Assembly (NCBI GenBank): GCA_002269645.1
Contig: NIVC01000163.1
Coordinates: forward strand, 248,001 to 312,000
Source: Macrostomum lignano
Taxonomy: Eukaryota
Reading direction: 5' to 3'
Length of the DNA stretch: 64,000 nucleotides
The notes beneath the pieces were generated by a model. The model saw only the letters and a program-made list of their open reading frames with translations, had not been told where the DNA came from and searched no databases. This document shows positions 1 to 61,861 of this stretch, piece by piece. The position numbers and the translations under genes are program-made. How positions within the stretch are numbered: position 1 is the first letter of the stretch; each line of letters starts with the position of its first letter.

Positions 1-54
1 ATGTACTACTGATGCCAGGCTGAAAGTAGTAGTAGTAGCTGTGTATGATGCTGA

Positions 55-870: not shown

Positions 871-1461
871 TCAGGTAGTGTGCAAAGCAAGCAACAATGA
901 AAGCGAACTGAAGGTCAGACAATTGAAACACAAAAAGCTGCTCAGTTAACGCACCAGACCCCAGTGGAATCTCAGATCCATTCGATTTATTGTACTAAAC
1001 TGTTTAGAAAGCTTTTTCAGAATACAGAAAAGTCGAATATTGGACAACTGTAGTCTGTAAATATTGCCTCGAAATAGGAATCGAGTTTGAGGCATCAACA
1101 ATTCTGTCAGTAACTGTAGTTCGGTACTTATAGTAGTATTACTTCATATGTGTAAATGTTAAAACTGAAGTCAAGCTACAGTAATAATAAGCATAATACG
1201 CAAATATAATTAAACAATGTACATTAATAATTGACACGGCAGGTAGCTGCTAAGTAATAGTAATAGTTTTATGTCGCTCTAGTTTCTTTCTTCAAAATAA
1301 AATAACCACTTAGAAGCGCAGGTGAGAATTCATACACAATTCAACCCTAACCCCGTCGATGTTGCCTACAATTTAAATTTGGAAGTTGGAGAAAATAAAC
1401 CAAGACGGCCGAACATAAGACTCGAATATTTTCCCGAGTTTTCATCCCGTGTCCATATTGT

Positions 1462-2893
1462 TCACTTTTTCTTGCCTTTGCCAGTGGCTGCTGCCGGCCC
1501 AGGAGCGGCAGTCGGCTGCGACAGAGACTGGCCCTTCTCTTTGCCGCGCAATTTTATGCCAATCTGGCGTTCGATTTTGCCAAGCACCTGATTGTTGGGA
1601 ATGGCTTGGCCGTTCTCGTATTCGGCTATCACCTGGGGAGCGGGCGGAGCGATGGCGGCGCACTGATTAGCTAGGTGAGATTAGATACATAGTGGATAGA
1701 CTGGGATTAGAATCATAGTGGGGAGAGTGAGATTAGAAACATAGTAGATAGACTGGGATTAGAATCATAGTGGGGAGAGTGAGATTAGAAATATAGTGGA
1801 GAGAGTGAGATTAGATACATAGTGGATAGAGTGAGATTAGATACATAGTGGAGAGAGTGAGATTAGAAACATAGTGGATAGAGTGAGATTAGATACATAG
1901 TGGAGAGAGTGAGATTAGATACATTGTGGACAGAGTGAAATTAGATACATAGTGGACAGAGTGAGATTAGATACATAGTGCAGAGTGAGACTAGACTCGG
2001 GGAAACCGTGATATTAGAGACTCGGGAAACAGTGAGATTGGAGACTCGGGTAAACCGCGATATTAGAGACTCGGGAAACAGTGAGATTGGAGACTCGGGG
2101 AGATTAGATACATAGTGGAGAGAGTGAGATTAGATACATGGTTGAGAGACTGAGATTAGATGCATCATGGACAGAGTGAAATTACGATACCTAGTGCACA
2201 GAGTGAGACTAGAGACTCGGGTAAACCGCGATATTAGAGACTCGGGTAAACCGCGATATTAGAGACTCGGGAAACAGTGAGATTAGAGACTAGGGGAAAC
2301 CGTGAGATTAGAGACTCGGGAAAACAGTGAGATTAGAGACTCGGGAAAACAGTGAGATTAGAGACTCGGGGGAAATAGCGAGACTAGAGACTCGAGGAAC
2401 AGTAAGATTAGACTCGAGGAAACAGTGATAACAGACTTAGGAAACAGTGAGATTAGACTATGGAGTCAGTAACACTGGAAAAGAAGTGATATTAGAGACA
2501 TCACGTGAAACTAATAGTAAGATTAGATAAAGAAGATTAGACTAGAATAGATTATAGACACATCAAAGCAACAATTAAAGTCAGAGTTATATATGGGGTA
2601 TAGGCACAAACCTGCGGCTTCTCATTAATCCTTGTGGCTAAATCCTTCTGACTAAGCCCCTTTGCTTGGCGGCCCTGCTGAATAAGCTTGCCAACGTCCA
2701 TGCCAACCCTGTTGTGATGCAGATTCTCAGTCTCCTGGTCCAGCTTTCTAGCATCTTTGTCAATCTTGTGCTGTTTATTAGAGCCGGAATCAAACTTTCT
2801 GTTAGCCTCAATCTGGAGACCCTGGCGTTGGGCCGAGGACAACTGCTGGGTGGTCTTGAGGTGGACCACTCGTTGATCATCAGCCTCTGCCAT
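1462..2893 (-). CDS. EDF1: Multiprotein bridging factor 1 / EDF1, 150 aa, 2 exons (2893-2612, 1632-1462)
   Basis: Exon 1 reads MAEADD...[45 protein letters not shown], then a GT donor at 2611. The CAG acceptor at 1633 is followed by [31 protein letters not shown]...KKK*. Phase-0 join; matches the MBF1 HTH consensus. Confidence 0.95.
1675..2500. repeat. Compound ~24-26 bp minisatellite (GTGAGATTAGATACATAGTGGAGAGA grading into GTGAGATTAGAGACTCGGGAAACA) filling the MBF1 intron
   Basis: Direct reading of the repeats; both unit types share GTGAGATTAGA. Confidence 0.9.
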
Positions 2894-4023
2894 TTCTTGT
2901 TTAATTAGTGAGTGTCGACAGAAAACATGCAATCAAATGGCAAAACTGGATGGCTCACATTTTATTTAAGGTTAATTAACTGTCAATGCTAACTATGGTT
3001 ACTTCGGTTTATCTGGCCTTTTTCCCTGTTCAATCTGCGTTCTCTCCATCTTCTATTCTTAACAAGAGTTCCACCATAACCAAAATTTTCCCATATCCAT
3101 CTGCATCTGTAAGCTCTAATTAATTTCCTGTAACTACCCAACCCATAACTTTTAATTATGATGTTAAATCCAATGGCAACAGTTCTTCTATTATTCACTA
3201 TAGTACAAGCATATATAGCGATGAAATAGAATGATAACAATAGTTTCGACTGCTACTTATTAATATAACAGGTCTTATTTAACCATTGTATAAGAATGGC
3301 TAGAACTGCATTTATCTTAATTTTAGGCCTCACAACCCCAACAAACAATACAATGTGCATATGGTGTAGAAAATCTCTATTGCTTAAATCCCCAAACTTA
3401 GTGACTTAAGAGCTCCCCTTGCATTTATAGTGAAAACATTCATCTTAACTTTAGCCCCTATGATCTCATCTACACAATGTGCACATGGAGGCAAAGATTT
3501 TCTTGCTATTTGAGTCTCCAACCCTAGGGACTTAAGAGTTACTCTTACAATAGCTTTGAAGCTGGAGTCTTTCATTCATTTCTATTGTTCTACCCCCTCC
3601 CACCCATTACATTAAATTAAGGGCTCCAATGATCTTTTATAAGTATTCTAAGTCTCAGTTATTGTCATAATTACATGCACCATCCACTGTGCCCACAGCC
3701 CCACATGGAGATAGATACCCTTTTCCCCCTTGCCTATACCACTAGCATATTAAATTATTATTTTTTTCATTTGCACTAATTTTTGCTGCAACACAATACA
3801 ATAGTCAGGCATCCACCTGCACCAACAACAATAATTCCAACTGGTGATCTTTGACAACCAGCCAAACTTCATGATCTGGACTTTTTACACTAATAGCTTG
3901 TAAGAATTGTGCCAAACAAACATGCTTTACCATGCTAGCCAAGTACTGGCTGATACATTTGGATAACTGCAATACTTATACCACTCCAATGAGCCTATAG
4001 CACCATAGATAGAGTACTTTCTT

Positions 4024-4252
4024 GCTAGGTTTTTTTCGTCTATAACTTGGGTGTGATTTTGCACCCTGTGCTAGATTTCAGGGTGCGATTTTCAAGACCA
4101 GGATGCGCTGCACTGCTGCAGACAAAATTGTAAAATCCACATCACATCCTCGCAAAAAATTCTGATGCACTTTTTGCACCCTGAGTCAAATCTTAGGGTG
4201 TGATTTTTAAGACCAGGATGCTATTTGCACCCATTTGCACAAAAAACCTAGC
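4024..4252. mobile_element. Possible small MITE
   Basis: 12-bp inverted ends GCTAGGTTTTTT / AAAAAACCTAGC and an internal direct repeat (TTGCACCCTG...AGGGTG.GATTTT.AAGACCAGGATGC). No clear TSD. Confidence 0.4.
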
Positions 4253-5281
4253 TTTGTTGGAGCTGCAAGACCTGTTAGCATAATGGTATATTCGCTTTTT
4301 GCTAGTAGTCATCTTCAATTGACCCAATTGATTGACATTGCCAGTTAGTCCAAGAGTAGAAAGATAGCTGCTACCTAGCTTAAGTGCCAGATTAGAAGCA
4401 ATAAGACTGATTAGCTAGTATAATTTACTCTGTGATGTCACAATCACAACCTAATACATAATTGATCATCCAATCAAAATTAGTTGACAAAGGTACAAGG
4501 TAGAAATTGATGAGTCAATTTTTTTCTACACAAATCAGTTAAGTGAAAAAAACCAAGAGTTCTTTCAATATAGTATATAAGATATTGCAAGATAAATGAG
4601 ATAACTCATGTTCCTAGGGGGAACAATAGGCTTTTTAAGTGTCAAAACCCTTTTATTTATGCAAGAAGATTACTGTGAAGCTATCTTTTAAGTGCAGCAA
4701 AGTGTGTCCGATGTGAAAATCAGTGCACAATTCTGTGAATTCAGTGAAGATCAACAAAATGATGATGTTTATAAATATACTAATCATCAGTGTAAAGACA
4801 CAACTTTGGTAAAAAAATCTATCAACAAATCTAATTTTTTTGCAAATGCAAAAATATACTTTGTTTATATATGCCAAGAGTGTATAATTGATTTCATCAA
4901 GGATGACTAAAACATGCCCCCCAAATCCAAGAATGACCAAAAACATATTGAATCAAGGAACTTTCAATGGTTCAATAAAATGGAAGCCTATAATAAATAC
5001 ATTAGAACAAAACATGGCTAGGCATATACTAAATTAAAAAAGCAATAGAACCTGGTGTCAAATCCAATAAAAATGTGTTCAACTCTAGTAAGTCAAAGAT
5101 TGTGGAAAAGCCTATATTGATGAACAGAAAAAATCTAACTACATTGAGAGTTTTATTAAGTCAAAGTGCACTAGAATTTGATCTTTTTTAAAGTTTGCCA
5201 AGGAAAAGACAAATTTAAAAAGACCTATATAAACTTTGGTCTAGACAAAAGGCACCAAAAAGCCTATCTTATATCTATTTT

Positions 5282-6560
5282 CAGTGTTGGGCAAGTTACT
5301 CAAAAAAAGTAACTTGCGTTACTGTAACTTAAGTTACCACTTTTTAAAAAGTAACTTACGTTAGCCTAGTAACTTTGAACAAAAACCCGGTAACTTTTAA
5401 GTTACTTCCGTTACTTACTTCCGTTACCTATGTTATTAACAAAATTTTCTGCTTTTTTAACATTGCAAATGTGATGGAACAGCACAAATGATCGCGAAAG
5501 CCAGGAGGAAGAGTACAACAACATTAATTTCAGTAACTGTATTAAATTTTAATCACTTTAGGCCCTTTCCGTAAAAAGAAGAGAAGCTGAAGGTCAGAAA
5601 CGTTAAAGGCAAAACGCAATTTAATTTTTAATAACATTATAAGTTATAATACACAAGGACAACTTAACGTAACTTCAGTTGTCCTTGATAATACATCACT
5701 CGTAATAAGTACCTGGCTTTATACTCCACTCTACAGTCTGCTTTACTAGTCTTTTTATTTATTTTCAATTATTATCATTAATATTAAATTATTGTGCAGT
5801 GCAGTGCAGTGCCAGTGGACTTTAGTGGTGTAGCCAGGGAGGCCGCCTTAACAATCGTTGGGGCGGCAACTTCACCCCACCTGCAAGACACCCCACCTGG
5901 GGGGTGGGGTTGGGCGTGGCGGGTACCAAAAACCATGAGGCGATTGAGTGCCTGCGGCGCTTAAATGAGTGCCTGCGGCGCTTAAATGAGTGCCTGCGGC
6001 GCTTAAATGAGTGCTTGCGGCGCTAAAATGAGTGCCTGCGGCGCTAAAAGTGGCAATGGCATGAGGCATGGCCAGCCAGGCCAACCCGCCCCCCCCAATT
6101 AAAATTCCTGCATGGCTACGTCGATCACTGAGTGGATTTGTGGAGACTACAGATGAATTTCTTTCTTTGGTTGTTTGTTTCTAAGAACTAAACAAAATAT
6201 TTTTATTAACTTAAAAACGAAAAGCAAAAATATTTTACCGAAAATAACAAAGTAAAAACATGTTTCAAGTATTTCTTTATTAATTACAGCGTAATACCGT
6301 ATGATATTATTCACTTAGTTTTGAATTTAGGAATGAAAAATGCTAAAAATGTGACAACTGGCGTAATAGCTAAGCATATCAGTTTTAAATTTAAATATTG
6401 CGATTGTTGCAAAGTAACTGTAACGGACTTCCGAAATTTGAGTAACTTACCGTTACTCCGTTACCAAAATAGGAAAGTAACTTGCGTAAGGAACGCTTTA
6501 CGAAAAAGTAACTTGCGTTACCATTTACAAGTTACTCGGTAACGGAAGTGCCCAACACTG
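5282..6560. mobile_element. Non-autonomous hAT-type DNA transposon
   Basis: TIR CAGTGTTGGGCA / TGCCCAACACTG; perfect 8-bp TSD TCTATTTT at 5274-5281 and 6561-6568; many subterminal GTAAC/GTTAC motifs. Confidence 0.9.
5822..6130. mobile_element. Small hAT-like MITE nested inside the 5282-6560 element, with an internal 21-bp repeat (GAGTGCCTGCGGCGCTTAAAT)x5
   Basis: Imperfect ends TAGTGGTGTAGCCAGG ... CCTGCATGGCTACG..CACTG; 7/8 TSD AGTGGACT / AGTGGATT. Confidence 0.55.
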
Positions 6561-7692
6561 TCTATTTTCATAATGCCAAAATTTTATTGATTCAATAGAA
6601 AACAAATAAAATTTAGTATAGGCCCTAGGCCTATCAAATTCAAAATAGAACTTAAGATTTCAAAATAATATGCAAAAATGCACCTAGAGCTAATGCAACA
6701 TCTAAGAAAAGCAAATAAAATTTTACTATGGAACATTTTGCATTAGACACTTTGCTTGCAGTTCACTTCTTAGCAAATGGGGTTAGATCAGTGTTATTAT
6801 TTTAGCCATTAGGCCTAATTTAATGAGTTTTTATGAGATTGACATTATATAGCTGAGTTGCTAGAAAGGTACAATAGGTTAATATTAGAGTTCATATACA
6901 TGCATTTCTATAGTTTATCAATGTTATCAATGTTATCAATGTTATCAATGCTAAAATATTTTTTGCATAGGGCCTATTAAATGTTATATATAATTTATAT
7001 TTTTATATTATATAAATCTTTATTACATTTTTATTGTTGCTTTGGATAATACAATATATAAATATACCAACCTTTTCCTAAGGCCTACAATCAATATATT
7101 ATCTTAGCAATTAGTAGGCCTATATTATTAAGGACAAGCAAGCAATCAAGCAAGCATACAAACCTTAGAGATTTTATATATTTGGATTGTAGCAATTAAT
7201 GCTTCCTCTTGATAGCTAATTATTGACCTCTATTTATAGCTAATGCTTCTTCTTAACTAACTATTGACCCCTACTTATAAAAATTATAATGGCTAGGCCC
7301 CTATAATTAATTTAGGCATATAAATATAATCCAAACAATTGAATTAGGCCTATAATGCTTCATTTTAACAGCTAACATAGGGGTCTACTAACTATTGATC
7401 TTAAATAACAGGTAGGCCTAGCCTATGAGGTAATAATAATATAATATCCCAATAATGAATGCTTTAAAGTTTGTTTATCTTGACAAATAGGCCTATTGAT
7501 CTATACCTATAATTAGGCCTAAATGCCTAATGGCATGCATCATCCTGATAGATATTTTGTTGGCATAGTTCTATTTTACTTTGCGATATTATTTTTATAG
7601 GCCCCCCCCCTATTTTTTGCATTTACATAGCATATTCTGCATCTGTACCTGAAGTTCCCAAACCACAACCCTTTCATTTTAATCTGAACAAT

Positions 7693-14921: not shown

Positions 14922-17900
14922 CTAGCTGAGGAAATTTTCTTACTATCTTGCTTGGGGTACTTTATATCAGGGGATGCTTGCTATCGGAAGGACGCTTGCT
15001 CTTAGGGATGCTTGCTCAGGGGAGATTGCTGAGATGCCAAGACTTACTGGGGAATTATTCAAATATGCAGGCTTACTGGGGGAATTACTGAGATGTCAAA
15101 GGCTTAAAACGGACTTGCTGAGATGCCAAGGCTTAAGAGGAAATTGCTGAGATTTCAAGGCGTGGGGGAATCTCTGAGATGTCAAGGCTTTGGACGCCTT
15201 GATAGCTAAGATTTCAAGACTTACCGGGGGGAATAACTGAGATATAAAGGCTTACGCAGGGAATTACTGAGATGTGAAGGCTTGGGGAGGTATCGCTGAG
15301 ATAGCAAGGCTTTGGATGGGGAGAAATTGCTAAGATGTCAAAACTTACTGGAGGAATCACCGAGATATAAATGCTTACTTGGAGGACTGCTGAGATGTCA
15401 AGGCTTGGGGAAAATTTATGAGACGTCAAGTCTTGGGGGGTTCCTGAAATTTCAAGTCTTGAGAGCGAATTGCTGAGATAACAAAGCTTAAGAGAGAATT
15501 ACTGAGGTGTCAAGCTTGGGGGAAATTGTTGAGATGTCAATTCTTGGGGGGGGATTCTATGGATTGGAGATTCTTTCCACAAGGGCTGCTTCTAATGGAT
15601 ATCTTTAGATAGGTGATTCATTGGGAAATTCCTTCGATGGGGGATTCTTTCGATGGAGGGTTCTTTGAATGGGGGGTTCTTTAGATGAATGATTCATTCG
15701 ATAAAGGGATCCTTTTGGATATGGCATTGTTTGGACGGGGATTCTTTAGATGAGTCTTCGGATAGGGGTTTCTATAAATGGGAGGTTTTTTGGATGGGGT
15801 ATTCTTTGCATGTGAGATTCTTTGTATCGTGGATTCTTTGGATGGGAGATTCAGTTGGGTTAAATTTTATTGTGTAAGAAAACTGTGGTTGGAGTTTGGA
15901 CGAAAAGCCCAAACGGGGGTTGGAATTGGCTAGCTGAGGAAATTGTTTCACTAATCTTGCTGGGGGTACTTTCTATCAAGGGATGATTGCTATCAGAAGG
16001 ACGTTTTCTCTTGGGGGATGCTTGCTCGGAATAAAATTCTAAGATGTCAAGATTTACAGGGGAATTATTGAGATACATGTATAAAATCTTACCTTAAGAG
16101 AGACTTGCTGAGATGCCAAGGCTTGTGAGGGGAATTGCTGAGATTTCAAGTCTTAGGGGTAAACTGCTGAGATGTCAAGTCTAAGGGGTAAACTGCTGAG
16201 ATGTCAAGTCTAAGGGGTAAACTGCTGAGATGTCAAGTCTAAGGGGTAAACTGCTGAGATGTCAAGTCTTAGGGGTAAACTGCTGAGATGTCAAGTCTTA
16301 GGGGTAAACTGCTGAGATGTCAAGTCTTAGGGGTAAACTGCTGAGATGTCAAGTCTTAGGGGTAAACTGCTGAGATGTCAAGTCTAAGGGGTAAATTGCT
16401 GAGATGTCAAGTCTAAGGGGTAAACTGCTGAGATGTCAAGTCTAAGGGGTAAACTGCTGAGATGTCAAGTCTAAGGGGTAAACTGCTGAGATGTCAAGTC
16501 TTAGGGGTAAACTGCTGAGATGTCAAGTCTTAGGGGTAAACTGCTGAGATGTCAAGTCTTAGGGGTAAACTGCTGAGATGTCAAGTCTTAGGGGTAAACT
16601 GCTGAGATGTCAAGTCTTAGGGGTAAACTGCTGAGATGTCAAGTCTTAGGGGTAAACTGCTGAGATGTCAAGTCTTAGGGGTAAACTGCTGAGATGTCAA
16701 GTCTAAGGGGTAAACTGCTGAGATGTCAAGTCTAAGGGGTAAACTGCTGAGATGTCAAGTCTTAGGGGTAAACTGCTGAGATGTCAAGTCTTAGGGGTAA
16801 ACTGCTGAGATGTCAAGTCTTAGGGGTAAACTGCTGAGATGTCAAGTCTTAGGGGTAAACTGCTGAGATGTCAAGTCTTAGGGGTAAACTGCTGAGATGT
16901 CAAGTCTTAGGGGTAAATTGCTGAGATGTCTAATCTTGTCGCCGTCGGGGAATTGCTGAGATGCCAAGGCTTAAGAGGGACTTGCTCAGATGTCAAAGCT
17001 TGTGGGGAATCAAGGCTCAGAGGGAGTTCCTGAGATGTCAAGTCTTGGGAAGGAGAATTACTCAGATGTCAAGGCTTGGGGAATTTCTGAGATGTCAAGG
17101 CTTGGGGGGATTGCTGAGATGTGAAGGCTTAAGAAGGAATTGCTGAGGTGTCAAGACTTTGGGAGGAAAATCGCTGAGATGCCAATGCTTTGGACGGGGA
17201 GAAATTGCTAAGATGTCAAGACTTACTGGAGGAATTACTGAGATATGAAGGCTTACTGGGGGAATTACTGATATGTCAAGGCTTGGGGAGGGGAATTACT
17301 GAGAAGTCAAGGCTTTGGACGGGGAGAAATTGGTAAGATGTCAAGGCTTGCGCCGGAATTGCTGAGATGTCAATGCTTATGGGAAATTTCTGAGGTGTCG
17401 AGGCTTGGGGGAACGGCTGAGATGTTAAGCCTTGGGGGAAATTCTATGGATTGATGATTCTTTGGATGAGGGATGCTTTTAATGTATATCTTTGATTCAT
17501 TGAGGAATTCCTTCGATGGGGCATTGTTTCGATGGAGGATTTTTTGAATCGGGGGATTCTTTAGATAAAGGATTCTTTTGATGGGGGATATTTGGACGGG
17601 GGTTTTTTAGATGAGGGGATTCTTTGGCCAAGAATTCTATTGATAGGGGAATTATTTGGATGGGAGATTCTTTGGATTCTTTGTATGGGGATTATTTGGA
17701 CGGGGTTCTTTAGATGAGGAAATTCTTTGGCCAAGAATTCTATTGATAGGAGGATTATTTGGATGGGAGATTCTTTGGATTCTTTGGATGGGGATTTTGT
17801 GGATGGGGATTATGATATGAATTATTTGGGTGGATTCTTTGGATATGGATGGATGGAGGATTCTTTGGATGGGAATTCTGTGGATGAGGATTTATTGAGT

Positions 17901-21400: not shown

Positions 21401-22192
21401 TGTTTTGAGAGTTATTTTACCTGTAGACGACTGATATGTTTGTCTTAGTTTGACCATAGACAAAACTGTGATGAGTGCATGATTTCGCTTGCGTCTTGCA
21501 AGAAATCAGGAAAGCGGGTAGTATACGAGTGAAAGCTATACTTGTCTTGTCAAACAACTATGGCTGGAACATCTCGTCAAACAGTCCCGCTTATTAATTG
21601 GAAAAAACTTCTTGTCGAAGACTAAACGAACCGTGAGACCTATGCTTCAGTGGAGATGAGACAGGAGATACGGGTGAAGCATGGTAAGCATAATATGTCA
21701 ACATTGTAAGTAAGTTAGTGGCTATACTAATGGCTATAAAGAAACTGAATTTTTTACAATGTCCATTAATCTGCAGGTCGGATGGATTCGGAACGCGCAA
21801 TTCGCTTCTTCGAGAACTGCCACTTTAAGGATTGCACGTTTCAGTTTTGATGAGCAACTTCTGATGAACAGTCTATGACTACTGTGTTGTTTTTGTGCTT
21901 AATGTGCGCGTTTTCCATTGTTTGGTGGCTAAAATGTCTTGACTATCCTTTTTTTCAGCGTATTCCAGAATGCCATGTAGACTGTTTGCGATTATTAACC
22001 CCTTATGTCAGTTAATAAATGCATAGTTACCTAATCGTCTATTGGTTCAAACGCCTGCTAAAGCTGAAATAATGGCCAGCTGAGTTTGTCATTACGCTAG
22101 GCTGTGTCTTATGGACAATGGGAAAGTCAGAGGTTCTATACTTGATATCGATTCGTCAAGTGTGCTTTAGTTCAGACAGAGTGCAAAAAATA

Positions 22193-22845
22193 CACTCAGC
22201 AACATTTAAAAGTGTCCACCCTTGCGCCAAAGGTCCATGGGCAGCACGATCGATGGTTTCGCCAATTGGTTTTGGGCCTTAGACAAATGAGCAAAAAGGG
22301 GCAGGAAAGTAAAGACCGATGTCACAGGGAAAAGCGTTACAGTAATTAACGAGTGTACAGGAGTTTACTGAAGGCATCTGGATGCAGGCGACAACGATAG
22401 TCCGCCAAATGACTGTTTGGCCCACTTTGCGTTGGTCGTCCAGATCACCGGATATGAACCCGATTGAGCACGTGTGGGATTTCCTGAAGCGCACGATTCG
22501 GTGCAACAATCTCTATCCCCCCAGAACATGGTCCAGCTGCGCAATGCGCTTTCAGTCGCGTGGCAACAGCTTCCACAAGACTTTCTGCGGCGCCTTGTTC
22601 GGGAATGCCTCGACGAGTGAGCGGTCTGTTGGACGCTCGTGGTTGCTATCTATACCTGTTACTGACTGTGCTTTAGACACGTACACAGCGTGGAAATGGG
22701 CATGGACTTGTTTCGCTGTTCATTCTTTGTTGCCTTATTTTGATTGTCTATGGCCCAAACATAGTTGAAAAACTTTTCAATCCCTAATCGTTCAGCTAGT
22801 GTAGCCTTTTGTGCAGACGTGGACACTTTTCAATGTTGCTGAGTG
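22193..22845 (+). mobile_element. Internally deleted Tc1 transposon with a DD34E transposase C-terminal remnant
   Basis: 27-bp TIR CACTCAGCAACATT(T/G)AAAAGTGTCCAC (26/27 match), TA flanks. WSSRSPDMNPIEHVWDFLKR followed by frameshifted LRNALSVAWQQLPQDFLRRLV / GMPRRV..LLDARG. Confidence 0.9.
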
Positions 22846-24136
22846 TAACAAGAAATTGTCCAGCGGTTGTCTAACAGTAAGATGCGCACTTAGATAAAGG
22901 ATCGCGACATAAAAGAAACAATCACTAAATCACGAATACGATGAGTTTTTTATCGATTCACAGGTAAGAGTTACATGCAATGTATTGATCATGTTACAAG
23001 AAAGTATTTGAATATTCTTGATTTCAAGGATTCCCGAAAGTTATAATCATCTTCCTATACAGGAGCTCACGAAAGCTTTTTCACAACTATACGTCACTTG
23101 CGCTCTAGTGAACACAATCTCATTGTGCGTGTCAGGGGCGTCATAAAACTGGGTGCAAATCTATGGGGGGACATGACAACGTTTTGTCCTCCCACGTCCC
23201 CACCTTGTGACCCGTTGTGGAAATCAATACTTTTGCTTCAGGGCGCCAAAATATAGCGCCTTTGACGCCAAAAATGACTGCTAACAACACCGTGGTTCTC
23301 AAAAAAAGCTAACCGAGAGAATTTAGTCATGTACACGATTGTGTTGCATTACGCAATCATCGGCCCACTCATCTATATTTTTCCTTCTTGGAGTCTGCAA
23401 GCTGACGAGTCGGGATGCATTGCACATCCTCCCCCAGCCACTTGAAGCCCTCAGCTTGTTGATTTTTGTTGACCCCCAGCATGGCGACCCTAGGCATTGA
23501 GATCTGGGTCTTTATTCGCCAGAGGGTCCCAACCAGATTTCAGCATGAGAAATTGAATACATTTCAACTGATCCGCCTACTAAATTCTCGAACACCAGAT
23601 CAACTATCGCCAGAGTACAATAGGCACAACCCGCGCTTTATTTGCCGCCAAATTGTTAGCATTGATCTGCTAGCCAAGTTTGATCAACAGGACAAGCGCC
23701 ATCAGCAACAAGGATCACTGAGCTTCCAATAGGTGAGCCTCCTTCATTCAGCCTCCATCAGGGAGCTCGTATAGCTACCCTGAATTAAAAGGTTTGTTCC
23801 ACACTCGAACGTATTTTTCTGAATTCGCCATTAGCTTTTATTTGAATGAGTACATATTGGAAATAACAGTGAGCAATACAGAAACTAAATAAAGTTCATT
23901 CATTGCCTTTCGTACAGATTGAAAACACAGGAGGCGTATAGTAAAGTTATTCGTGCTTCACAACATGTCGACAATAAGTACAACACATCACACAGATATC
24001 TATGAGAGCTGGGTAGAGGTTGACAATATCAGATGGGCTAGATATGGGACATTTCTCGTGGGTTACTTCAGTTGCTCTGAGTTGTGATGTACGTGTTGAA
24101 TTGTGTATTTGAGAGTGAGTAAAAAACACTTTGCGG

Positions 24137-25262: not shown

Positions 25263-26429
25263 ATGCCAGACAGTACTTCAAGCTATTCAATTGAGTCCGC
25301 AAATACTCGTACGCGTGGCAGTCCATCATCAGGTGGTTGTCTAGCAGTGAAGCGGGCGCTAAGAAAGGAGCGAGACATCAAAAAGAACCTGAGTCTAAAA
25401 TACAAATACTATGAATTCTTCGTCAACTCACAGGTAAGGCCTTCTGTTGCTAAAGAATATCACTATGCTAGTTTTTCCAGTCACAGGACCTTAAAATTAA
25501 ACGACCACGTGTTGTCTTTTAAGTATACCAGCTAACAATAACCAACACTCGCGGCTAACCCACAGTGGATCCCGAACTGGCTACTTCTGCTTCTGCGCTG
25601 TCTCATGGGAGGCACCTGCATCTCGGTTTTCATTTATGTGTCTGTCCAATCTGGCAACAAAGCTTCGTCAAGCACCAGCACAGAAACAGCTACAAGTTCT
25701 CATTCTCCTACTGCAAGCTCAAGCTCAAGCACTTCCTATTTCTACCTGACCTACCTGACGATCTGGAGCTACCTTATGATGACTCTGTACTTTACTTGTG
25801 CTCTGGTGAACACAATCTTATTGTGCGTGTGCTCGTCAGGGTGTTGCAGCATCGCTGCTGGAGAATCTTTCAGTTTAACTGACTGTGGCTATAAAACTGC
25901 CGACCAATTGAAAGCTGTCCGCAAACGGTCCGAATTGAAGAGAGCTCTAGATTCGGTGGCTAGACAGTCGGGCTTCCGGCTTCAGTGGCTGCTGCACACG
26001 ATCGCCACGGATGCTGCTCTGCTCGTCACTGTAGCTTACTTCTCTCTGCTGTACGAAAACTCGTCTCCAATTGCCACCTTAGATCTGTTGGAGCACGGCA
26101 TCAACTCTGTGTTTATGTTCATTGAAGCCTTCTTTGGCGGCGTTCCGGTTCGCTTCGTGAATATTATCTACGCCGTTTGTTACGCAGTGATTTACGTTTT
26201 GTTCAGCGTATTCTACTGGCTATCGGATCGTAACAATGTAATCTATCTATATTTGGACTGGAACAACCCGGGACTGACAACTGGTGTTGTGTTCGGCTTA
26301 ATTCTCATCGGGATGCCTCTGGTGCACGCAGTCTGGTGGGGCATACATCTGCTGCGCTGTTACATTGGTGGCGTATTGCTCCATCGGGAAAACAAGTGCA
26401 GTCCAACGCTTGAGACTGAGAACGCTTGA
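25263..26429 (+). CDS. rost: Rolling stone-like multi-pass membrane protein, 344 aa, 2 exons (25263-25433, 25566-26429)
   Basis: Phase-0 splice (SQ|W). Motifs YLTIWS, ALLVTVAYF, EHGINSV, YAVIYVLFSVFY and IYLYLDW are characteristic of the rolling stone (FAR-17a/AIG1-like) family. Confidence 0.85.
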
Positions 26430-27095: not shown

Positions 27096-28467
27096 GCTTC
27101 GGCTGTCCGGAAAGTCGTGAGAATGTGTCAATTAAGCAAGAAAGCAGCAAGCTGTTGACGTGGCACACAGAAATTTTCAATAATAGACTTATATATGTCT
27201 ATGGTGAAAATTCTTGTTATTCTAGTAGCAAAATTGGGGGCAGGGGCGAGCTCAGTATAAAGTGCTCAATAGCAAATGCAACGCGGTGATCAAGTTTGAA
27301 AATTTTGACAGCAAGTTCTTCAAAATGGAAGACTTCCAGCTGTCCAGGGTTATGCCTATGCTAGATACCGTCTTGGAATCTCCGCTCTCAGCTGCCATGA
27401 CGAGCTGCTCAAAGTTTATGGAGATGCTGCACCAAATCGGTCAACGGTTTACAGATGATATTCGAAGTTCCGAAGCATTTCCCCCGGTCTCAGCTCCTCG
27501 GACTGGCCGGCCACGGTCAACAAGGACAGCGGAACTGATCGAAACCTGCCGAGCTCTTATTGAAGAGGATCCAAAAGTTAGTGTCCGAGACCTCGCTGAC
27601 TTTTTGGAAGTTGGAAAAACAACAGTGCACGAAATTTTGACCGAGGATTTGCACCTTCGAAACGTTTCTGCTGTCTGGGTTCCGCATGCTCTATCCGAGG
27701 AGAACAAGACTGCTCGCATCAATTGTGCCAAGCAAATTCGCAGGCTTTTTTACAACGAGGGCAAGGAAAACTTTTGCGACAAGTACGTGGTGGAGGATGA
27801 GACGTGGGTGTACCTGAACAACATTGGCACAAAGCAAAACAACAGGTGCTGGCTTGGCCAAGGGAATCATCGGCCCCAGGTTGTCAGGCACTCAGTCGGC
27901 AATGCAAAGACAATGCTTCTGGTTGCTTTTACTCCAAACAAGCGCTTCTCCATTGAATCCACAGCCCCAAAGCAAACTGTTGATGCAAATGGCATAGTTG
28001 AGTTCATTCGGCACACCGGAGACCTATGGCGTACTCTCGAGTCAAGGCCAATTCATCTGTCGGATGTTCTTTGGCAGTGGGACAATGCGCGACCTCACGT
28101 GGCTCGTTCTGTGCAGCAGTACATGGAGTCCCGTGGAGTTCAGCTGGTGTTTCAGAGTCCTTACAGCCCAGACTTCAATTTGTGCGACCGTTTTTTGTTC
28201 AGTTGGATGAAGACTGATCCGTACACTTCCGTTTTTCTCCAGGCGAGTGTTCAGCGACCACAATGAAGTTCGAGAAGCTGCGTTGCAATGGGCAAGAGGC
28301 CTTGACGAAGATTGCTTGAAAAGAGAGGTTCAGCGACTCGTTGACCATTGCCAAGCTGTAATCAACGCAAGGGGAGATTACATTACCAACTAGTGCTGTT
28401 ATCGTGTTTTCTGATAGTTCTGACTGATTTTTTAAATACATTCTCGCGACTTTCCGGACAGCCGGAG
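27096..28467 (+). mobile_element. Full-length mariner (DD34D) element with a defective transposase (original ATG ~27325, stop ~28393)
   Basis: ~30-bp TIRs (CGGCTGTCCGGAAAGTCG.GAGAATGT), TA flanks; WVPHAL, DETW, DNARPH-x34-YSPDFNLCD. The HTH (GYAYARYRLG...VYGDAAPNRSTVYR*) lies in another frame with a TGA at 27456, and the C-terminus FSDHNEV...RGDY is frameshifted at ~28220-28245. Confidence 0.92.
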
Positions 28468-31738: not shown

Positions 31739-52104
<20,366 letters not shown>

Positions 52105-53579: not shown

Positions 53580-56500
53580 TCACAGAGCGAACAGTCGCTG
53601 GAACCATGACTGATTGTACCTGATCACATCAAAGTTCGGGTCGTCCGTGCTTTTGAATCCACCGCCAGAATTCGCTATCGCGACAGGCTGGTTGTCCGGT
53701 ATCTGCTGCTTAGAAGGCAGATCCGATTCTACAATTGGATTCGAGTAGATATCTCTGGGCGGCTCATAGTGACTGCAGCAGCTGTTTTCAGAGCTGATGG
53801 TCGCGTCTGAAGCTTTGCGACTGTTAAGCACGCTGGATACGGTTGAGCAAGGATGAATCCTGTTGTTATTGTTGCTACCTTTGGCATTTCTAGTTCGCCG
53901 AATGTTCCATTTTACCAGACTGTAATAGGTGACTTGGACCATTAGCTCGATAACCTCGATTAGGGTAATGATGGATACACCGATCCACAGTCCTGTAAAG
54001 GCAAGCGTGCCGCACTTTAAGTCATAGACATGCTTGTACGCTCGTATCTGATGAATTTTGTCCCTCAAAGGTTATGGGTCGGTTTGAGCGATTCTAGGTT
54101 TGCTGGTAACTCTCACTTCATGCTCTAGAGGTTTAGGTGACAGATCTAGACAGAAATCAGCTTGGAAGTCTTGACAACTACAGTTGTTTCTAAGTTATGC
54201 TCTGTGTACGCAGTAGTGTTCAAGTAGTCTATGTGCTACAGAGAACATTCTCAAAAGCTCTCTCGATGTCGACAAACTTCCTGCAAGCAAATTGCTCGCT
54301 TAGGATGGCGCTTTTTGGAACTCTCGATTTTGGAACTAACGGCAAGGAGAACGGACCTCAGGGAGATGTGCATAGTCCTACCGGCCATGGATTCTTCCAT
54401 AGATATATCTCGTTGCGAACCGGTTACCCCATCATCTTCTATGGCATTGGAGAGGAGACTGCGGAGAATACTTCGATAAGGTGCGGCACAAACACCTCGG
54501 CCACCCCCAAAGGATGGACGAGTGACCACCCAAGACAACATCCGCGATCTTCGCGCCTTCGTCCGAGATACAGCTAGGCCGGATGAAGGTCGTCATGCCT
54601 CCTTTGAAATCCTGCCGACTACTGGCTGGGACTGCGGGGACTAAGGGGACTAAGGGGTTCAAACTTGGTTTCTTTCACCTTGGGGTTGCGAGATGAGTCT
54701 AATCGTGGCGCCTGCGCCCCCGCCGCCTGTAGTAGTAACTAAGTAAGCTGTCTATATGACATGGTTATGATCTACCTACTCACCAAAAATGCCGCCTAAA
54801 TCTGAGAAAAGGTTCCTGAGCGGGTAGGCCCAGTCTTCACGGGATACGGTGGCCCGAATCGATCTTGGATAGAGGTCGACCACCGTGAACTGGTGCTGGC
54901 TGAGCCTCTGCGCCAGCTCGTCGTATACGCGCTGCAATCTTGACACAGTTAAATTATCCTCTCTAACCAGTTGTATCAGTCTGTTTAGGTAGGCCTTCAG
55001 CACCTGTTCGTTAGTATCCCAGTTTGAGTTGACGGAGGGCCAGGCGGCCAGCGTAGTGACCACATTGTGCTCAGTAGTGAGACAGCGATGTTTACAGTCG
55101 GTTGACAGACCCGAAGTCCTCTGTCTCTCGTGGACTCGTTTGTAGCAAGTGAAGCGACGAGCAATTTCTTCATAGATAGGTCTCTGCTCAACCAGGTAGT
55201 CGGACAGTGGGAAGTACACCCAGCTCGAATTGGTAATAGTGTAGAAAATTGTCGACAAGTTGTCGGACTCGAAATATACGTCACGATAGAAAAACTGCAG
55301 TGAAATGATACAGTGTTGGTATGAACGTCGGAATGATTTCTTGCAGCATCGTTATTTTCGATAACTATCCACTGCTTTGATCTGCCGATGCCTTAACATG
55401 TACCTCCTCAGGCAGCTGATGCCTCTCTCTAGCCCTGACAACTCACCTTCTCAGGCTGCTGATGTCCCTCTCTATCCCTGACAACCCACCTCCTCATGCA
55501 CCTGATGTCTCTCTCTATCCGCGGCAACCCACCTCCTCAGGCAGCTGATGGCAGGGAGGCCAAACCGTCAGCATGTCAGCTGGCAAGGCCAGATGGGTGC
55601 CCAAACATCCGCAGGTTTCAGCAAACTCCTTCTGCTTAGCTCGAATGATGCAATCCTGCAGAGTGCCAAAAAACGTGACGTTCTCAAAGTCGCCAGGTCT
55701 GGAATAGTCCCAGGTGTAGGTGGCGTTGGGCAGCTTCTCACAGCACGGCGAAGGCACTCGGTCAATGTTGTAATCGATGCTGGATTGCAGTTGAGCCGAA
55801 GTTTTGTAGCCCAGTGGCGCGTTAAACGAATAGCTGAAGTCAGGCTTTTCACCTACATTTATTTATTGGAAAGATGTTGCTAATACGCTCGTGGCAGGAA
55901 GTAGTAGCTAGTGATTCTTAGTCAATAAATTAAAGTTTGCCTCTTTAACCGAGTGCAGTAATATCAGTTCACCTGGCTCATGCAGCACCACTTTGAAGCC
56001 ATTCATCGAATCCAGCAGTTGTTCGTTGGTTAAAAATGCGGTTGCATTGCTGTGCAATAGCAGGTAAAGTCCGTTGCCTTCGCCCGGTTGAACTACAGTG
56101 CGATTGACCGGACTGAAGGTCAGGCAGATAAACCTGTAGTAAGGTCGTTTTTGCTACCAAACTAATTCGAAATTTTGGTTTTTGCTCGTACGTACGCTCG
56201 TATACTCAGCAACACTGAAAAGTCGCCACTCTATGCGCCAGTGAGCAATTTCTCTAGGACTATTCTGAAAAAAAAGACACGAGAAAACTGATCGGGGTAA
56301 GTTTTAAGTAGCAAAGATTGAGAGACTATACCTGCACTCTCAAAGTGACAACCACAGACGGAATCTTCTGTGATAGCGACTTCGATGTTGCCGAGTATAT
56401 ATTGTCTTATTTAAATGATGCCACAAATACAGTGCTGTGACGTTGCTAGTTTAAAGTGGTCCCGCAAAAGGGCCGTTGGACTGTAATTTTCCTTACAATT

Positions 56501-59500
56501 TTTCATTTAAAATTTCCAGTTGTGTATTCTCACGTTTACTTGTAGTAGCGCGCAACTAATCTGTATCAATTGCTAAATCACTGCGTACTTTGTAAGCTTT
56601 GCGTACGCCTGTAGAGTCTCGCGCCATCAATAATTTCCGTTTCTTGTTTTTCCCTCGCCAGCCAATGATAACTCTCCGCATATATTATGTTAACCCTCCT
56701 GCGCTCCTTTATTAACCCCGCCTGGCGGCGGGCTGGGGTTTTTTTTCACTTTCTTTGGCTTCCTCGCTCTCCTTATCTCTCGCCACGGCTCCACTCTGTC
56801 TGGGCCAGACTGTCTACGCACTCTTGCTCCACTGTGTACTGCTACGGGCCGACGCCCAATCTCGCCACTTTGTCTGTTGCCTACTTGCTGCTCACTGCCA
56901 TCACTGTGCTCACAGCCATCACTTGCTACTCGGCTTCATCCCAATTATCATCATCTACTCAACTTTCATCTATACGACTAAATTACATCAACCCATTGTT
57001 GCAGCCGCCAGTGCCCCATAACGTCATAAGCTTCTGTAATAATATTAACATTGATAATTATAAACCAGTTGGCGTCTTTTTTTACCTACCGCCATTGCCA
57101 AGTGCTACCGCTACAAAATCTACTCTGCCATTGTTGAGTTCACCATCCTTTTGGGACTAAGTAATAACGTCAGTACTCTCGTCAAACGGCCCTTTTGAGG
57201 GCTATCGCCACTGCTACGCCAATAACGTGACAGTGCAGCTATAAAAATAGAGAAATAATTTAATAGACAGTAATAATACGAGAATTGCAGAGTCAATAGA
57301 CTGCAAGTTAAGCTGAGTTGACTGTGACTAGCATGCAGTTGCAACGCTTGTGTCACACAGATTGGTGATGCAAATTGTATCACCCACCAGTTCCGACGAG
57401 AACCGTGTGCGTGTTTTTAATTGCGTCACTTGGGGCTGATATCTGAGAAAAATTGACCAAAAATGACTACTGGTAACTGGTTTCAGTGAGGAAACTAACA
57501 TTTTGCTTAGTGTATGTCAGGAAATTAAAAGAAAACCCAATTCACAACAACACCAGTTAGCAGTGATAAAGTAGGGTTGGGATTGGGATGGGGTAAGATA
57601 CAACTGGAGCGGAGGAGGGGCAAACCGTCAAATAAAAAATCGATAACCCTAAGAAAGCCGCTCTCTTTATCAGTCGATAATGGGAGCCAGTATTGCAGTG
57701 ATAAAGTAGGGTTCGGATAGGGTAAGACAACTGTGGGGGAGGAGGGGCAGACTATCAAATAAAAAATCGATAGCCCAAGAAACCCGCTCGCTCAGTCAGT
57801 GGGACGTCCTGAGCCAGAAAGCAGTGATAAAGTACGGTTAGGATAGGGTAAGACAACTGTGGGGGAGGAGGGGCAGACTATCAAATAAAAAATCGATAGC
57901 CCAAGAAACCCGCTCGCTCAGTCAGTGGGACTGTCCTGAGCCAATAAGCAGTGATAAAGTACGGTTAGGATAGGGTAAGACAACTGTGGGGGAGGAGGGG
58001 CAGACTATCAAATAAAAAATCGATAGCCCAAGAAACCCGCTTACTCAGTCAGTGGGACTGTCCTGAGCCAGTAAGCAGTGATAAAATGTTATTAAAGGCA
58101 TGGGTAGGAAATAAATAAGTGGGGTTGAGAGACGGACTAAAAAAATCGATAAACCCAAAACAAACCACCACGATCAGCCAGTCGTTACTAATAGACAGGC
58201 CGATGAAAAAGAAGTGTCCCTCACATCTCTAAATAGTGGCAGGAATTTTGATGCATGTACAAGAGGTTAAAAAGCAGATCAGCAAGTAAGTATGCAAGAG
58301 TATAGTCACTGTCAAATGAGAGATGCATGTACATTGTTGGAACTTGGAATACCCACTAAGCTATACTTGAATTTTGAAATAATAAAAAATAAAACGGCAC
58401 AGTTTAAAGTTCAATTTTATAATCAAATTGGGGTAATTTGGGCTTAAATTTACTTTTCATTCCGAAATTAAGATGGTCATTATTACGTGCAGGTACAATA
58501 TGGTGCTTGAAATCGCAGCTGACAGATTCTGCAATGCTCGTATTAAAGATCAATTAATGTAAGATCGGCAAGATAAACAGTTTAAGTTCCATTGCAGGCA
58601 GTTGGCGCGGGTTCAATTTAAGACTTTCCTAGAAACGCCGGCTCTCCTCCGGAAGCGCCGGCAGCAGTTTCCCGGAAAGGTGGCCCTCAGCGGCGGCCCG
58701 CAGCAGCCGCAGCGCCTGCCGAACGTCGTGGTGACTCACCTGAGCAGGCAGCCGTCGGATTCGAATGACTTCGTCGTCGCCTTCCTGACTGACCAGCAGC
58801 TGCAGTCTGTCGGCGAACCGGGCCTCCAGTCGGACAGTCGCCGAGGTCAAGTCGAAGCTGCTCTGTCGCCGAACGAGGCCTAACTGGGTGAAGCGGATGG
58901 CGGCGGGGTCGTCCTCGCTGTTGAACAGCGCGCTGATCTGCTTCAGTGCGCCGTCAGCTGTCGCTGTCACGGCCGCTTCGATCACGGCGACTCTGAGAGG
59001 CCCGGCGAGAGACTTCGGCAGCCCGAGCGAGCGGGTGAACACGGAGGCGAAGGCGGTTGCCATGGAGACTGGGATGCGGCGCAGAGTCTGGCTGGTAGCG
59101 GAAATGGCCAGGCGGTCGAATCCGGTTCTGACCAGCTCCACCAGCGTGGCGTTGCCGCCGTCCTCCGAGGTTGCAGCCGTTGGGCCTGCGGTCGTCGAAA
59201 CCTCCAGCTGCAGTTCTTCCACCACCTCCGGTGCCTCGGGAGCATCGCTGGCGACCTCCTCGGCGGATCGGCGGCTGCGCAGCATGCCGGAGCTGGCGGC
59301 CACCCGACTTGCCGCGGCAGCGATGGCGAAGTGCCTCAGCCCAGCCTCCACCTGCCGCAGCTCCTCGGCCGTGAGGCCCCGCGGCACCTGCTGCGTCCAG
59401 GAGCGGCACCTCCTGATGAACCACCGGCGCTTGCAGCTTCGCATCGGCACAGGCGTTGTCTTGGCAACCAGCTGGGCGGTGGCGACGCTGTGCACGATGC

Positions 59501-61861: not shown

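What the first reader, a model, noticed from the sequence alone, without database searches (positions are those of the whole stretch)
56203..60602. Tc1-family cargo transposon carrying an intact secreted-protein gene inside a DEG/ENaC intron
Seen: TA-flanked ends identical for 64 bp and ~97 bp overall, a second inverted ~85-bp block, no transposase, and an intact 441-aa intronless ORF with its own TATA box. The TIR tip TACTCAGCAACACTGAAAAG closely resembles CACTCAGCAACATTTAAAAG of the Tc1 DD34E relic at 22193. Known: Pack-type gene capture is well described for MULEs, CACTA and Helitrons and much less so for animal Tc1/mariner. Inference: a young non-autonomous Tc1 derivative mobilises a functional effector gene and could be spreading it through the genome.
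Basis: partly seen in the sequence, partly recalled or inferred. Interest (0 to 1): 0.88.

Follow-up and report, generated by a model that had tools for sequence, protein, structure and literature searches.

The report
Gene sandwiched between two MITE copies
In an intron of a flatworm (Macrostomum lignano) sodium-channel gene, two complete inverted copies of a small Tc1-type mobile element bracket an intact, expressed gene for a secreted protein; it may once have moved as a unit, but it is old, sits at one locus only, and shows no sign of spreading.

Summary
The reading as one young cargo transposon is only partly right.

- **Structure.** The two "ends" are complete copies of one ~281-bp Tc1-type MITE (56203-56398, with an internal deletion; 60322-60602). 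Each has its own terminal inverted repeats and TA flanks, and they lie head to head around the gene.
- **Organism and host.** This is Macrostomum lignano. The block fills intron 2 (56134-60929) of a DEG/ENaC gene.
- **Cargo.** The 441-codon gene is real. It has transcript-based annotation (Mlig014438), dN/dS of 0.16-0.28, and remote homologues that all start with a signal-peptide-like segment.
- **Copies elsewhere.** The same sandwich occurs only at this locus, in the neopolyploid's subgenome copies (L003, L005). The only other locus with the gene, beside alanyl-tRNA synthetase (L001, L002, L004), shares just 58541-60286 and has no MITEs.
- **Age.** The block predates subgenome divergence. Copy-specific changes since include an ~800-bp insertion, a MITE deletion and, in L003, a recombinase element splitting one MITE. 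A 1.27-kb nested element is in all copies.

One unit insertion through the outer ends (Pack-type or "sandwich" composite) is plausible, about 0.5. Ongoing spread is not supported, and no autonomous partner was found.

The parts
56134..60929 (-). Intron 2 of the host DEG/ENaC gene (4796 bp). Only 69 bp on the acceptor side and 327 bp on the donor side lie outside the block.
   Evidence: Exon ORFs match Pfam ASC. tblastn of the concatenated exons locates them. GT is at 60929-60928 and AG at 56135-56134, and the splice restores ...IYKDEQ-R-FICLTFSP, matching homologue P0004.
56203..56398 (+). Left MITE copy (196 bp), complete at both ends but with a 77-85-bp internal deletion. TA lies on both sides.
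   Evidence: It is co-linear with the reverse complement of the right copy. It has its own inverted termini, 56201-56219 against 56381-56399. The orthologous copy in L003 (12673-12949) is full length, so the deletion is secondary.
56434..57234 (.). Nested ~800-bp insertion (TE2) with about 50-nt imperfect terminal inverted repeats. The target duplication is not resolved.
   Evidence: It is present in the window and L005 and absent from L003, where the flanks are contiguous. The TIR alignment is, and pair I5.
57276..58543 (.). Nested ~1.27-kb TIR-bounded element (TE3) with TA flanks and an internal 127-bp tandem array (57553-58160).
   Evidence: Inverted termini 57274-57309 against 58510-58545. 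Tandem array. Its right end coincides with the point (58541) where homology to the second gene locus stops.
58541..60286 (-). Gene segment shared with the paralogous locus beside alanyl-tRNA synthetase: about 330 bp upstream of the ATG (promoter and 5' leader), the CDS, and about 90 bp of 3' flank.
   Evidence: blastn against L001, L002 and L004 gives about 94% over about 1.75 kb and nothing beyond. Substitutions between loci are 1.4-2.4% in the CDS, 8-9% in the 5' flank and 25-29% in the 3' flank.
58629..59954 (-). Intronless CDS of 441 codons plus stop, encoding a probable secreted protein of an uncharacterised conserved family (Mlig014438).
   Evidence: ORF. It is 98-99% identical to annotated M. 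lignano proteins. It is intact in the window, L003 and L005, with dN/dS 0.16-0.28. There are 45 remote homologues, and the aligned ones have hydrophobic N-termini and a conserved C..C..VPRG.T..E motif. No Pfam match.
60033..60040 (-). TATA box (TATAAATA) of the nested gene.
   Evidence: Read directly from the sequence. It is conserved in all five other copies, 50-59 nt upstream of the 5' end of the transcript-derived annotation.
60322..60602 (-). Right MITE copy (281 bp, full length), inverted relative to the left copy. TA lies at both ends if the element is taken to begin at CTC.
   Evidence: Alignment. It has its own inverted termini, 60330-60349 against 60579-60598. In L003 the orthologous copy is split by a 1.48-kb insertion encoding a tyrosine-recombinase fragment.
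22193..22847 (.). Internally deleted Tc1-type relic whose 43-nt TIRs share their first ~37 nt with the MITE ends. It is the only link to a transposase.
   Evidence: TIRs 22191-22233 against 22805-22847. MITE positions 2-38 match 22194-22229 at 84%. It carries a frameshifted ...SPDMNPIEHVWDFLKR... fragment whose relatives carry DDE_3.

Best explanation
The 4.4-kb block is a sandwich rather than a single transposon.

**What it is.** Two complete copies of a ~281-bp Tc1-type MITE lie head to head, with their better-conserved ends facing outward. They bracket a compact, expressed, selectively constrained gene for a secreted protein, inside intron 2 of an ENaC gene of Macrostomum lignano. Two other TIR-bounded elements later landed inside it. 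The arrangement is old and fixed: it predates the divergence of the subgenome copies and is found at this one locus only.

**How it most likely arose (inferred).** The pair of neighbouring MITEs and the DNA between them were once recognised by a Tc1 transposase through the two outer TIRs. They were cut and pasted as one unit into a TA in a short intron. This is the Pack-type or composite route, and it has the same geometry as the engineered Sleeping Beauty "sandwich" vector. Since then the block has behaved as a resident nested gene with its own TATA promoter.

**What is shown and what is inferred.** The anatomy, age, single-locus status and the reality of the gene are shown. The single unit transposition is inferred. 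My confidence is about 0.9 for the anatomy and about 0.5 for the unit move.
For: **Anatomy**
- The two arms are co-linear copies of one element.
- Each has its own inverted termini.
- The TIR motif occurs at the left outer, right inner and right outer ends and at both relic ends. The left inner end is a degenerate copy.

**Single locus and age**
- L005 is collinear with the window. L003 has the same sandwich at the same ENaC/NWD1-like locus, with private changes.
- M. lignano carries three subgenomes about 2% apart in SNPs (PMC10733133).
- The left and right MITEs differ by 7-8%, whereas orthologous copies differ by 0.7-6%.

**The gene is real**
- GenBank annotation of this assembly is transcriptome-derived (PMC5730564).
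- The ORF is intact in all three intron copies, with dN/dS 0.16-0.28.
- It has remote homologues, and an alignment-based model reaches pLDDT 74.

**Unit insertion**
- The intron outside the block is 69 + 327 bp. The equivalent intron of the adjacent ENaC paralogue is about 280-480 bp.
- Two random insertions would bracket at least 91% of a pre-existing intron with P of about 0.008.
- With the two nested elements removed, the MITEs enclose about 1.86 kb, of which 1.75 kb is exactly the segment shared with the paralogous locus.
- The outer ends are identical over about 64 bp, while the inner ends carry a 3-nt insertion or a 2-nt deletion.
- The mechanism has precedent: Pack-TYPE capture by neighbouring insertions, including Pack-Mariner in rice (PMC8903248), and the Sleeping Beauty sandwich vector (PMC4229213).
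Against: - No second copy of the composite and no empty site were found. The only other locus with the gene has no MITE, and its homology stops 35 nt short of the right MITE and 78 nt short of the left one after removal of the nested TEs. Those residues show no significant similarity to that locus, so no donor is identified.
- TA flanks are uninformative for Tc1-type elements.
- No solo copy of the MITE was seen in about 170 kb of M. lignano DNA, so "MITE family" rests on structure and on the relic's TIR.
- No autonomous partner was found.
- The bracketing argument is post hoc. Detectable homology may mark only what selection or gene conversion has preserved.
- If the element's terminus is read as TACTCAG, in register with the relic, the inner end of the right MITE is flanked by AG rather than TA.
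Confidence: 0.55

Rival explanations
1. This is a resident nested gene with two independent MITE insertions. The gene copy reached the intron by some other DNA-level duplication. Two copies of the same MITE family then inserted separately on either side of it, as MITEs often do near genes. Nothing ever moved as a unit.
For: - Each MITE is complete, with its own TIRs and TA on both sides.
- The two copies differ by 7-8%.
- The arrangement is confined to one syntenic locus.
- The paralogous locus has no MITEs.
- Other transposons have repeatedly landed in this same interval, so it is a receptive target.
Against: - It needs an unexplained 1.75-1.86-kb insertion into a ~400-bp intron, followed by two same-family insertions within 35 and ~78 nt of its edges, in inverted orientation.
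- The geometric chance that two random insertions span at least 91% of the intron is about 0.008, or about 0.02 if the gene is excluded as a target (the second figure is my own arithmetic from the same lengths).
- The adjacent paralogue's equivalent intron is short.
Confidence: 0.3
2. The origin was by repair or recombination. A single MITE in the intron was duplicated in inverted orientation together with a little flank, and the gene segment was copied in as filler during double-strand-break repair (template switching). No composite was transposed.
For: - The inner flanks of the two MITEs resemble each other for 13-20 nt beyond the inner termini (TTGTCTTAT against TTGTATTAT). The global score reached P of about 0.014 for the window pair.
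- The gene segment has no transposon hallmarks of its own.
Against: - The flank similarity is AT-rich and marginal, and it is not significant with the L003 flank. It could reflect target preference.
- The left and right MITEs differ by 7-8%, more than any orthologous MITE pair (0.7-6%). That fits two older family members better than a duplication in place.
Confidence: 0.1
3. One reading: one young non-autonomous Tc1 derivative with ~100-280-bp TIRs whose interior was replaced by a host gene, currently mobile and spreading the gene.
For: - The outer ends are near-identical, with TA flanks.
- The TIR resembles that of a Tc1 relic in the same window.
- The gene is present at more than one locus.
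Against: - The inner motif in each arm is inverted relative to the outer one, not direct as in IR/DR-type long TIRs. Each arm is therefore a whole element.
- The block is shared by subgenome copies and carries nested insertions and deletions.
- The second locus lacks any TIR.
- The chimeric UniRef models map to that same second locus, so no third locus is known.
Confidence: 0.03

Closest known systems
Pack-TYPE DNA transposons formed by mobilisation of neighbouring insertions (Catoni model; includes Pack-Mariner of rice; PMC8903248)
   Same: Two compatible non-autonomous elements lie close together with host DNA between them, and the outer TIRs are available as the ends of a larger unit. The superfamily is Tc1/mariner with TA flanks. 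The inner ends are more degenerate than the outer ones.
   Different: - Pack elements are recognised as multi-copy families and usually carry gene fragments. Here there is a single locus and a whole gene, with promoter, that remains under purifying selection.
- The host is an animal (a flatworm), not a plant.
- Mobilisation as a unit is inferred, not shown.
Sleeping Beauty "sandwich" (SA) vector (Zayed et al. 2004, as described in PMC4229213)
   Same: Two complete Tc1-family elements lie head to head and flank a cargo cassette, so that the outermost ends act as the transposon ends.
   Different: - The vector is engineered, and cleavage at its inner ends is deliberately abolished by mutating the terminal CA.
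- Here the inner ends are merely more degenerate, and no activity has been tested.
- SB arms have IR/DR structure, whereas these MITEs have simple ~20-27-nt TIRs.
Bacterial composite transposons (two IS copies flanking cargo, e.g. IS630-family composites; PMC9977792 for the definition)
   Same: The logic is the same: two copies of a small element of the IS630/Tc1/mariner superfamily move the DNA between them.
   Different: The flanking copies here are non-autonomous, so transposase must come in trans. The setting is a eukaryotic chromosomal intron.
Ordinary nested (intronic) genes flanked by MITEs
   Same: An independent transcription unit sits inside a host intron in a TE-rich genome, with MITEs nearby.
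   Different: The two MITEs belong to one family, are inverted, and bracket almost exactly the segment that is duplicated at the other locus. Together with it they account for nearly the whole intron.

Membership tests
Tc1/mariner-type MITE (each arm) | Short, non-coding element bounded by terminal inverted repeats | tested here: met
   The copies are 281 bp and 196 bp. Their own TIRs are 60330-60349 against 60579-60598 and 56201-56219 against 56381-56399. No coding capacity.
Tc1/mariner-type MITE (each arm) | TA target-site duplication at both ends | tested here: inconclusive
   TA flanks all four termini if the element starts at CTCAG. If it starts at TACTCAG, in register with the relic's CACTCAG, three termini have TA and the right copy's inner end has AG. 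More copies are needed to fix the terminus.
Tc1/mariner-type MITE (each arm) | TIR shared with a transposase-encoding element of the superfamily | tested here: met
   The first ~37 nt match the TIR of the 22193-22847 relic at 84%. The relic carries a Tc1-type DDE_3 C-terminal fragment. No intact partner was found.
Tc1/mariner-type MITE (each arm) | Repeated as solo copies at many genomic sites | not testable with these tools
   Only about 170 kb of M. lignano DNA could be read (the window plus 5 loci), and it held no solo copy. No whole-genome search of this species was available.
Pack-type / composite DNA transposon | Two compatible element ends enclosing captured host DNA | tested here: met
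   After removal of the nested TEs, the MITEs enclose about 1.86 kb, of which 1.75 kb is the paralogous gene segment.
Pack-type / composite DNA transposon | Evidence of movement as one unit: copies at independent sites with their own TSDs, or an empty site | tested here: not met
   The composite is found only at the syntenic ENaC locus (window, L003, L005). The other gene locus lacks MITEs. There is only indirect support, from intron size and bracketing.
Single long-TIR (IR/DR-type) Tc1 element | Inner transposase-binding repeat in direct orientation to the outer one within each arm | tested here: not met
   The inner motif is inverted relative to the outer motif in both arms.
DEG/ENaC channel gene (host) | Match to the Pfam ASC (PF00858) profile across exons, with an intact reading frame | tested here: met
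   E-values of 1.6e-16 and 4.2e-07 on two exons. It is 43% identical to an M. lignano acid-sensing ion channel model. The exons are open and 97-100% conserved in L003 and L005.

The most novel reading that the evidence does not exclude
This is a natural "sandwich" composite. A pair of Tc1-type MITEs picked up a complete gene with its promoter and transposed it as a unit into an intron. There it has stayed functional under purifying selection through a whole-genome duplication. That would be whole-gene transduplication by MITE pairs acting as a working route of gene duplication in an animal.
Probability: 0.45. Interest if true: 0.6.

Novelty: new member of a known kind. Interest (0 to 1): 0.4.

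Why it matters
Gene capture by cut-and-paste transposons is documented mainly in plants and mostly yields gene fragments. A Tc1-type MITE pair that delivered a whole, still-functional gene into a new locus of an animal genome would show that the "neighbouring insertions" route can produce working gene duplicates in Metazoa. It would also give M. lignano, which is transgenesis-ready, a natural template for testing high-cargo sandwich transposition.

If the two MITEs instead arrived separately, this is an ordinary nested gene in a very TE-rich neopolyploid genome. A genome-wide BLAST would separate the two cases cheaply.

Tried and rejected
- **Empty-site search through ENaC homologues.** The host ENaC is not in the annotated protein set; the only hit was a 43% paralogue from UniRef with no DNA. 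The syntenic loci were reached instead through the cargo protein's cluster members. All of them carry the block, so no empty site was found. The adjacent ENaC paralogue's intron serves only as a rough proxy.
- **Autonomous partner.** The transposase ORF at 27262-28266 is a different, mariner-like element with unrelated TIRs. A protein search with the relic fragment gave no M. lignano hit; the best was 67%, from an unnamed read-archive assembly (Logan) contig.
- **Extending homology to the second locus.** I looked in the 35 nt and 78 nt next to the MITEs. Neither was significant.
- **A third gene locus from the chimeric UniRef models P0003 and P0008.** Both map to the alanyl-tRNA-synthetase locus.
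- **Literature search for Mlig014438 and Mlig031296.** No paper mentions them.
- **Function of the cargo.**
  - No Pfam family matched.
  - The single-sequence structure model failed, with pLDDT 36.
  - The alignment-based model was good, but Foldseek against the PDB gave nothing at E <= 0.001. There were only faint START/Bet v1-like hints, which I do not rely on.
- **Retrocopy origin of the intronless gene.** Rejected, because the shared segment includes about 330 bp upstream of the ATG, including the TATA box, and has no poly(A) tract.
Full report
**1. What is in the sequence**

The region 56203-60602 is bounded by inverted repeats.
- Arms 56201-75 and 60530-604 are 75 nt long and 97% complementary.
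- A second pair, 56320-82 and 60343-405, is 94% complementary (BLAST).

Aligning the left end (+) with the reverse complement of the right end shows that these are not two separate repeats. They are one co-linear unit of about 281 bp. The left copy has lost 77-85 bp from its middle.

Each unit carries its own terminal inverted repeats: 60330-49 against 60579-98, and 56201-19 against 56381-99. The motif CAGCAACAYYKAAAAGT occurs five times in the window against 0.09 expected by chance. The five sites are the left outer end, the right inner and outer ends, and both ends of the relic at 22193-22847. The left inner end is a degenerate copy with a 2-nt deletion.

So the "transposon ends" are two complete MITE-like elements, head to head, with TA beside their termini. 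The relic has 43-nt TIRs that share about 37 nt with the MITE (84%). It also holds a frameshifted Tc1-type C-terminal transposase fragment. That places the MITE in the Tc1 family.

**2. Organism and host gene**

The ORF 58629-60011(-) is 98-99% identical to hypothetical proteins of Macrostomum lignano.

The block lies in intron 2 (56134-60929) of a DEG/ENaC gene on the minus strand.
- Pfam ASC matches two exons.
- The splice sites were read directly.

Outside the block the intron has only 69 + 327 bp. A second ENaC paralogue lies head to head, starting at 62951. Its equivalent intron is about 280-480 bp in L005 and L003.

**3. The cargo gene is real**

- It has 441 codons from Met 59954, and TATAAATA lies at 60033-40.
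- GenBank annotation of this assembly derives from a genome-guided transcriptome with repeat-overlapping transcripts removed (PMC5730564). The gene is annotated as two transcript clusters, Mlig014438 and Mlig031296.
- The annotated 5' ends lie 50-59 nt downstream of the TATA box in all copies.
- All three intron-locus copies have intact ORFs. dN/dS is 0.16-0.28 in every informative pair.
- An exhaustive profile search found 45 remote relatives at E <= 0.001. None of the ten scanned has a Pfam domain. In the alignment they all begin with a hydrophobic, signal-peptide-like segment and share a C..C..VPRG.T..E motif.
- With that alignment AlphaFold gives pLDDT 74 and two alpha/beta domains. No PDB fold matches at E <= 0.001.

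"Secreted" is therefore an inference from the N-terminus. The function is unknown.

**4. Where else the gene and the block occur**

Cluster members led to five loci in assembly GCA_002269645.1.
- **L001, L002 and L004** lie beside alanyl-tRNA synthetase. They share only window 58541-60286 (about 94%) with the window. They have no MITE or TIR motif within 10 kb either side.
- **L003 and L005** are syntenic with the window, with the same ENaC exons and the same downstream NWD1-like NACHT-WD40 gene. Both contain both MITEs.
- **The two chimeric UniRef models** that include the ORF also map to the synthetase locus.

So two loci are known. M. lignano carries three subgenomes (S, L1, L2) about 2% apart in SNPs and rich in indels (PMC10733133). 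That accounts for the two to three copies per locus. The composite has therefore been multiplied by polyploidy, not by transposition.

**5. Age and later history**

L003 differs from the window and L005 in four informative ways.
- Its left MITE is full length, so the internal deletion is secondary.
- It lacks window ~56434-57234, an ~800-bp piece with about 50-nt imperfect TIRs. This piece (TE2) is a later nested insertion.
- Its right MITE is split by a 1.48-kb insertion encoding a tyrosine-recombinase fragment (Phage_integrase/DUF3504).
- All three copies share a further TIR-bounded 1.27-kb element, TE3 (57276-58543). It has TA flanks and an internal 127-bp tandem array.

The left and right MITEs differ by 7-8%, while orthologous MITEs differ by 0.7-6%. 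The structure is therefore older than the subgenome split and is not "young".

**6. How it got there**

With TE2 and TE3 removed, the MITEs enclose about 1.86 kb. Of this, 1.75 kb is exactly the segment shared with the synthetase locus, and TE3's end coincides with the end of that homology. The rest of the intron is about 396 bp, similar to the paralogue's intron. Two random insertions would span at least 91% of a pre-existing intron with P of about 0.008.

The outer ends are identical for about 64 bp. The inner ends carry a 3-nt insertion or a 2-nt deletion.

These points favour one insertion of MITE-gene-MITE through the outer ends. That is the mechanism proposed for Pack-TYPE elements, which include Pack-Mariner in rice (PMC8903248). 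It is also the mechanism exploited in the Sleeping Beauty sandwich vector (PMC4229213).

Several points count against it.
- No donor, second composite or empty site was found.
- The 35 nt and 78 nt next to the MITEs show no significant similarity to the synthetase locus.
- TA flanks are uninformative.
- The argument is post hoc.

Divergence between the loci is graded: 1.4-2.4% in the CDS (dS 0.03-0.055), 8-9% in the 5' flank and 25-29% in the 3' flank. This suggests an old duplication with the CDS kept similar by selection, and probably by gene conversion. The detectable homology may therefore understate the original duplicated tract.

**7. Comparison and verdict**

The block works like a Pack-type or composite transposon in structure. 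It fails the defining test of membership, which is demonstrated mobility as a unit. It is not an IR/DR long-TIR element, because the inner motifs are inverted. No autonomous partner was found: the mariner-like ORF at 27262-28266 has different TIRs, and no M. lignano relative of the relic's transposase turned up.

The finding is a tidy candidate for whole-gene capture by a MITE pair in an animal. On present evidence it is a single, old, fixed locus.

Noticed in passing
window 27097-28467: A mariner-like element with 30-nt TIRs (27097-27126 and 28438-28467). It has an uninterrupted 334-codon ORF (27262-28266) with HTH_Tnp_Tc3_2 and DDE_3 matches below the Pfam thresholds. Its TIRs are unrelated to those of the MITE.
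   Followed up: partly
window 22193-22847: An internally deleted Tc1-type element (655 bp) with 43-nt TIRs, TA flanks and a frameshifted transposase C-terminus. It is the nearest relative of the MITE ends.
   Followed up: yes
L003 8099-9574: A 1.48-kb insertion splits the right MITE in this subgenome copy only. It encodes a 321-aa ORF matching Phage_integrase and DUF3504, which makes it a Crypton-like tyrosine-recombinase element or derivative. A possible 7-nt target duplication is AAGATTG/AAGAATG.
   Followed up: partly
window 62951-63352 (+) and onward; L003 ~750-5300, L005 ~680-6700: A second DEG/ENaC paralogue lies head to head with the host gene. It is about 45-60% identical in most exons, but 82% identical (L003) in the exon-4 region, where a ~350-bp DNA stretch is 91-93% identical (window 55402-55753 against L003 1563-1903 and L005 3004-3343). 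This may reflect local gene conversion between the paralogues.
   Followed up: no
window 58541-60286 against L001, L002, L004: Divergence between the two gene loci is steeply graded: CDS 1.4-2.4%, 5' flank 8-9%, 3' flank 25-29%. Inter-locus dS (0.03-0.055) is no larger than dS between subgenome copies of one locus (up to 0.046). This looks like gene conversion limited to the CDS.
   Followed up: partly
window 56399-56420 and 60300-60321: The inner flanks of the two MITEs resemble each other just beyond the inner termini (TTGTCTTAT against TTGTATTAT). This is marginal: P of about 0.014 for the window pair and not significant with the L003 flank. It could reflect target preference or a shared duplicated flank.
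   Followed up: partly
window 47901-51451 (+): The 3' exons of an NWD1-like NACHT-WD40 gene, annotated as an 1805-aa product in L003 and L005. It served as the synteny anchor.
   Followed up: partly
window 25605-26429 (+): A 274-aa ORF matching Pfam Rost (protein rolling stone), E = 6e-13.
   Followed up: no
window 51-872, 16106-16937, 36159-37231, 43866-45369, 46934-47875, 62410-62903, 63447-63821 and others: The window has a very high density of tandem-repeat arrays (68 TRF rows). One is a 28-bp satellite that is also present near the gene in L001 and L002. Another is a 27-bp coding-looking APPPDTYSL repeat between the two ENaC genes.
   Followed up: no
L002 ~10750 and L001/L002/L004 ~11330: The synthetase-locus copies carry an 11-nt deletion near the stop that changes the C-terminus (...LPAETALLGKK). 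L002 also has a 1-nt deletion that frameshifts the ORF at codon ~240. It is unclear whether that is a real pseudogenisation or a long-read assembly error.
   Followed up: no
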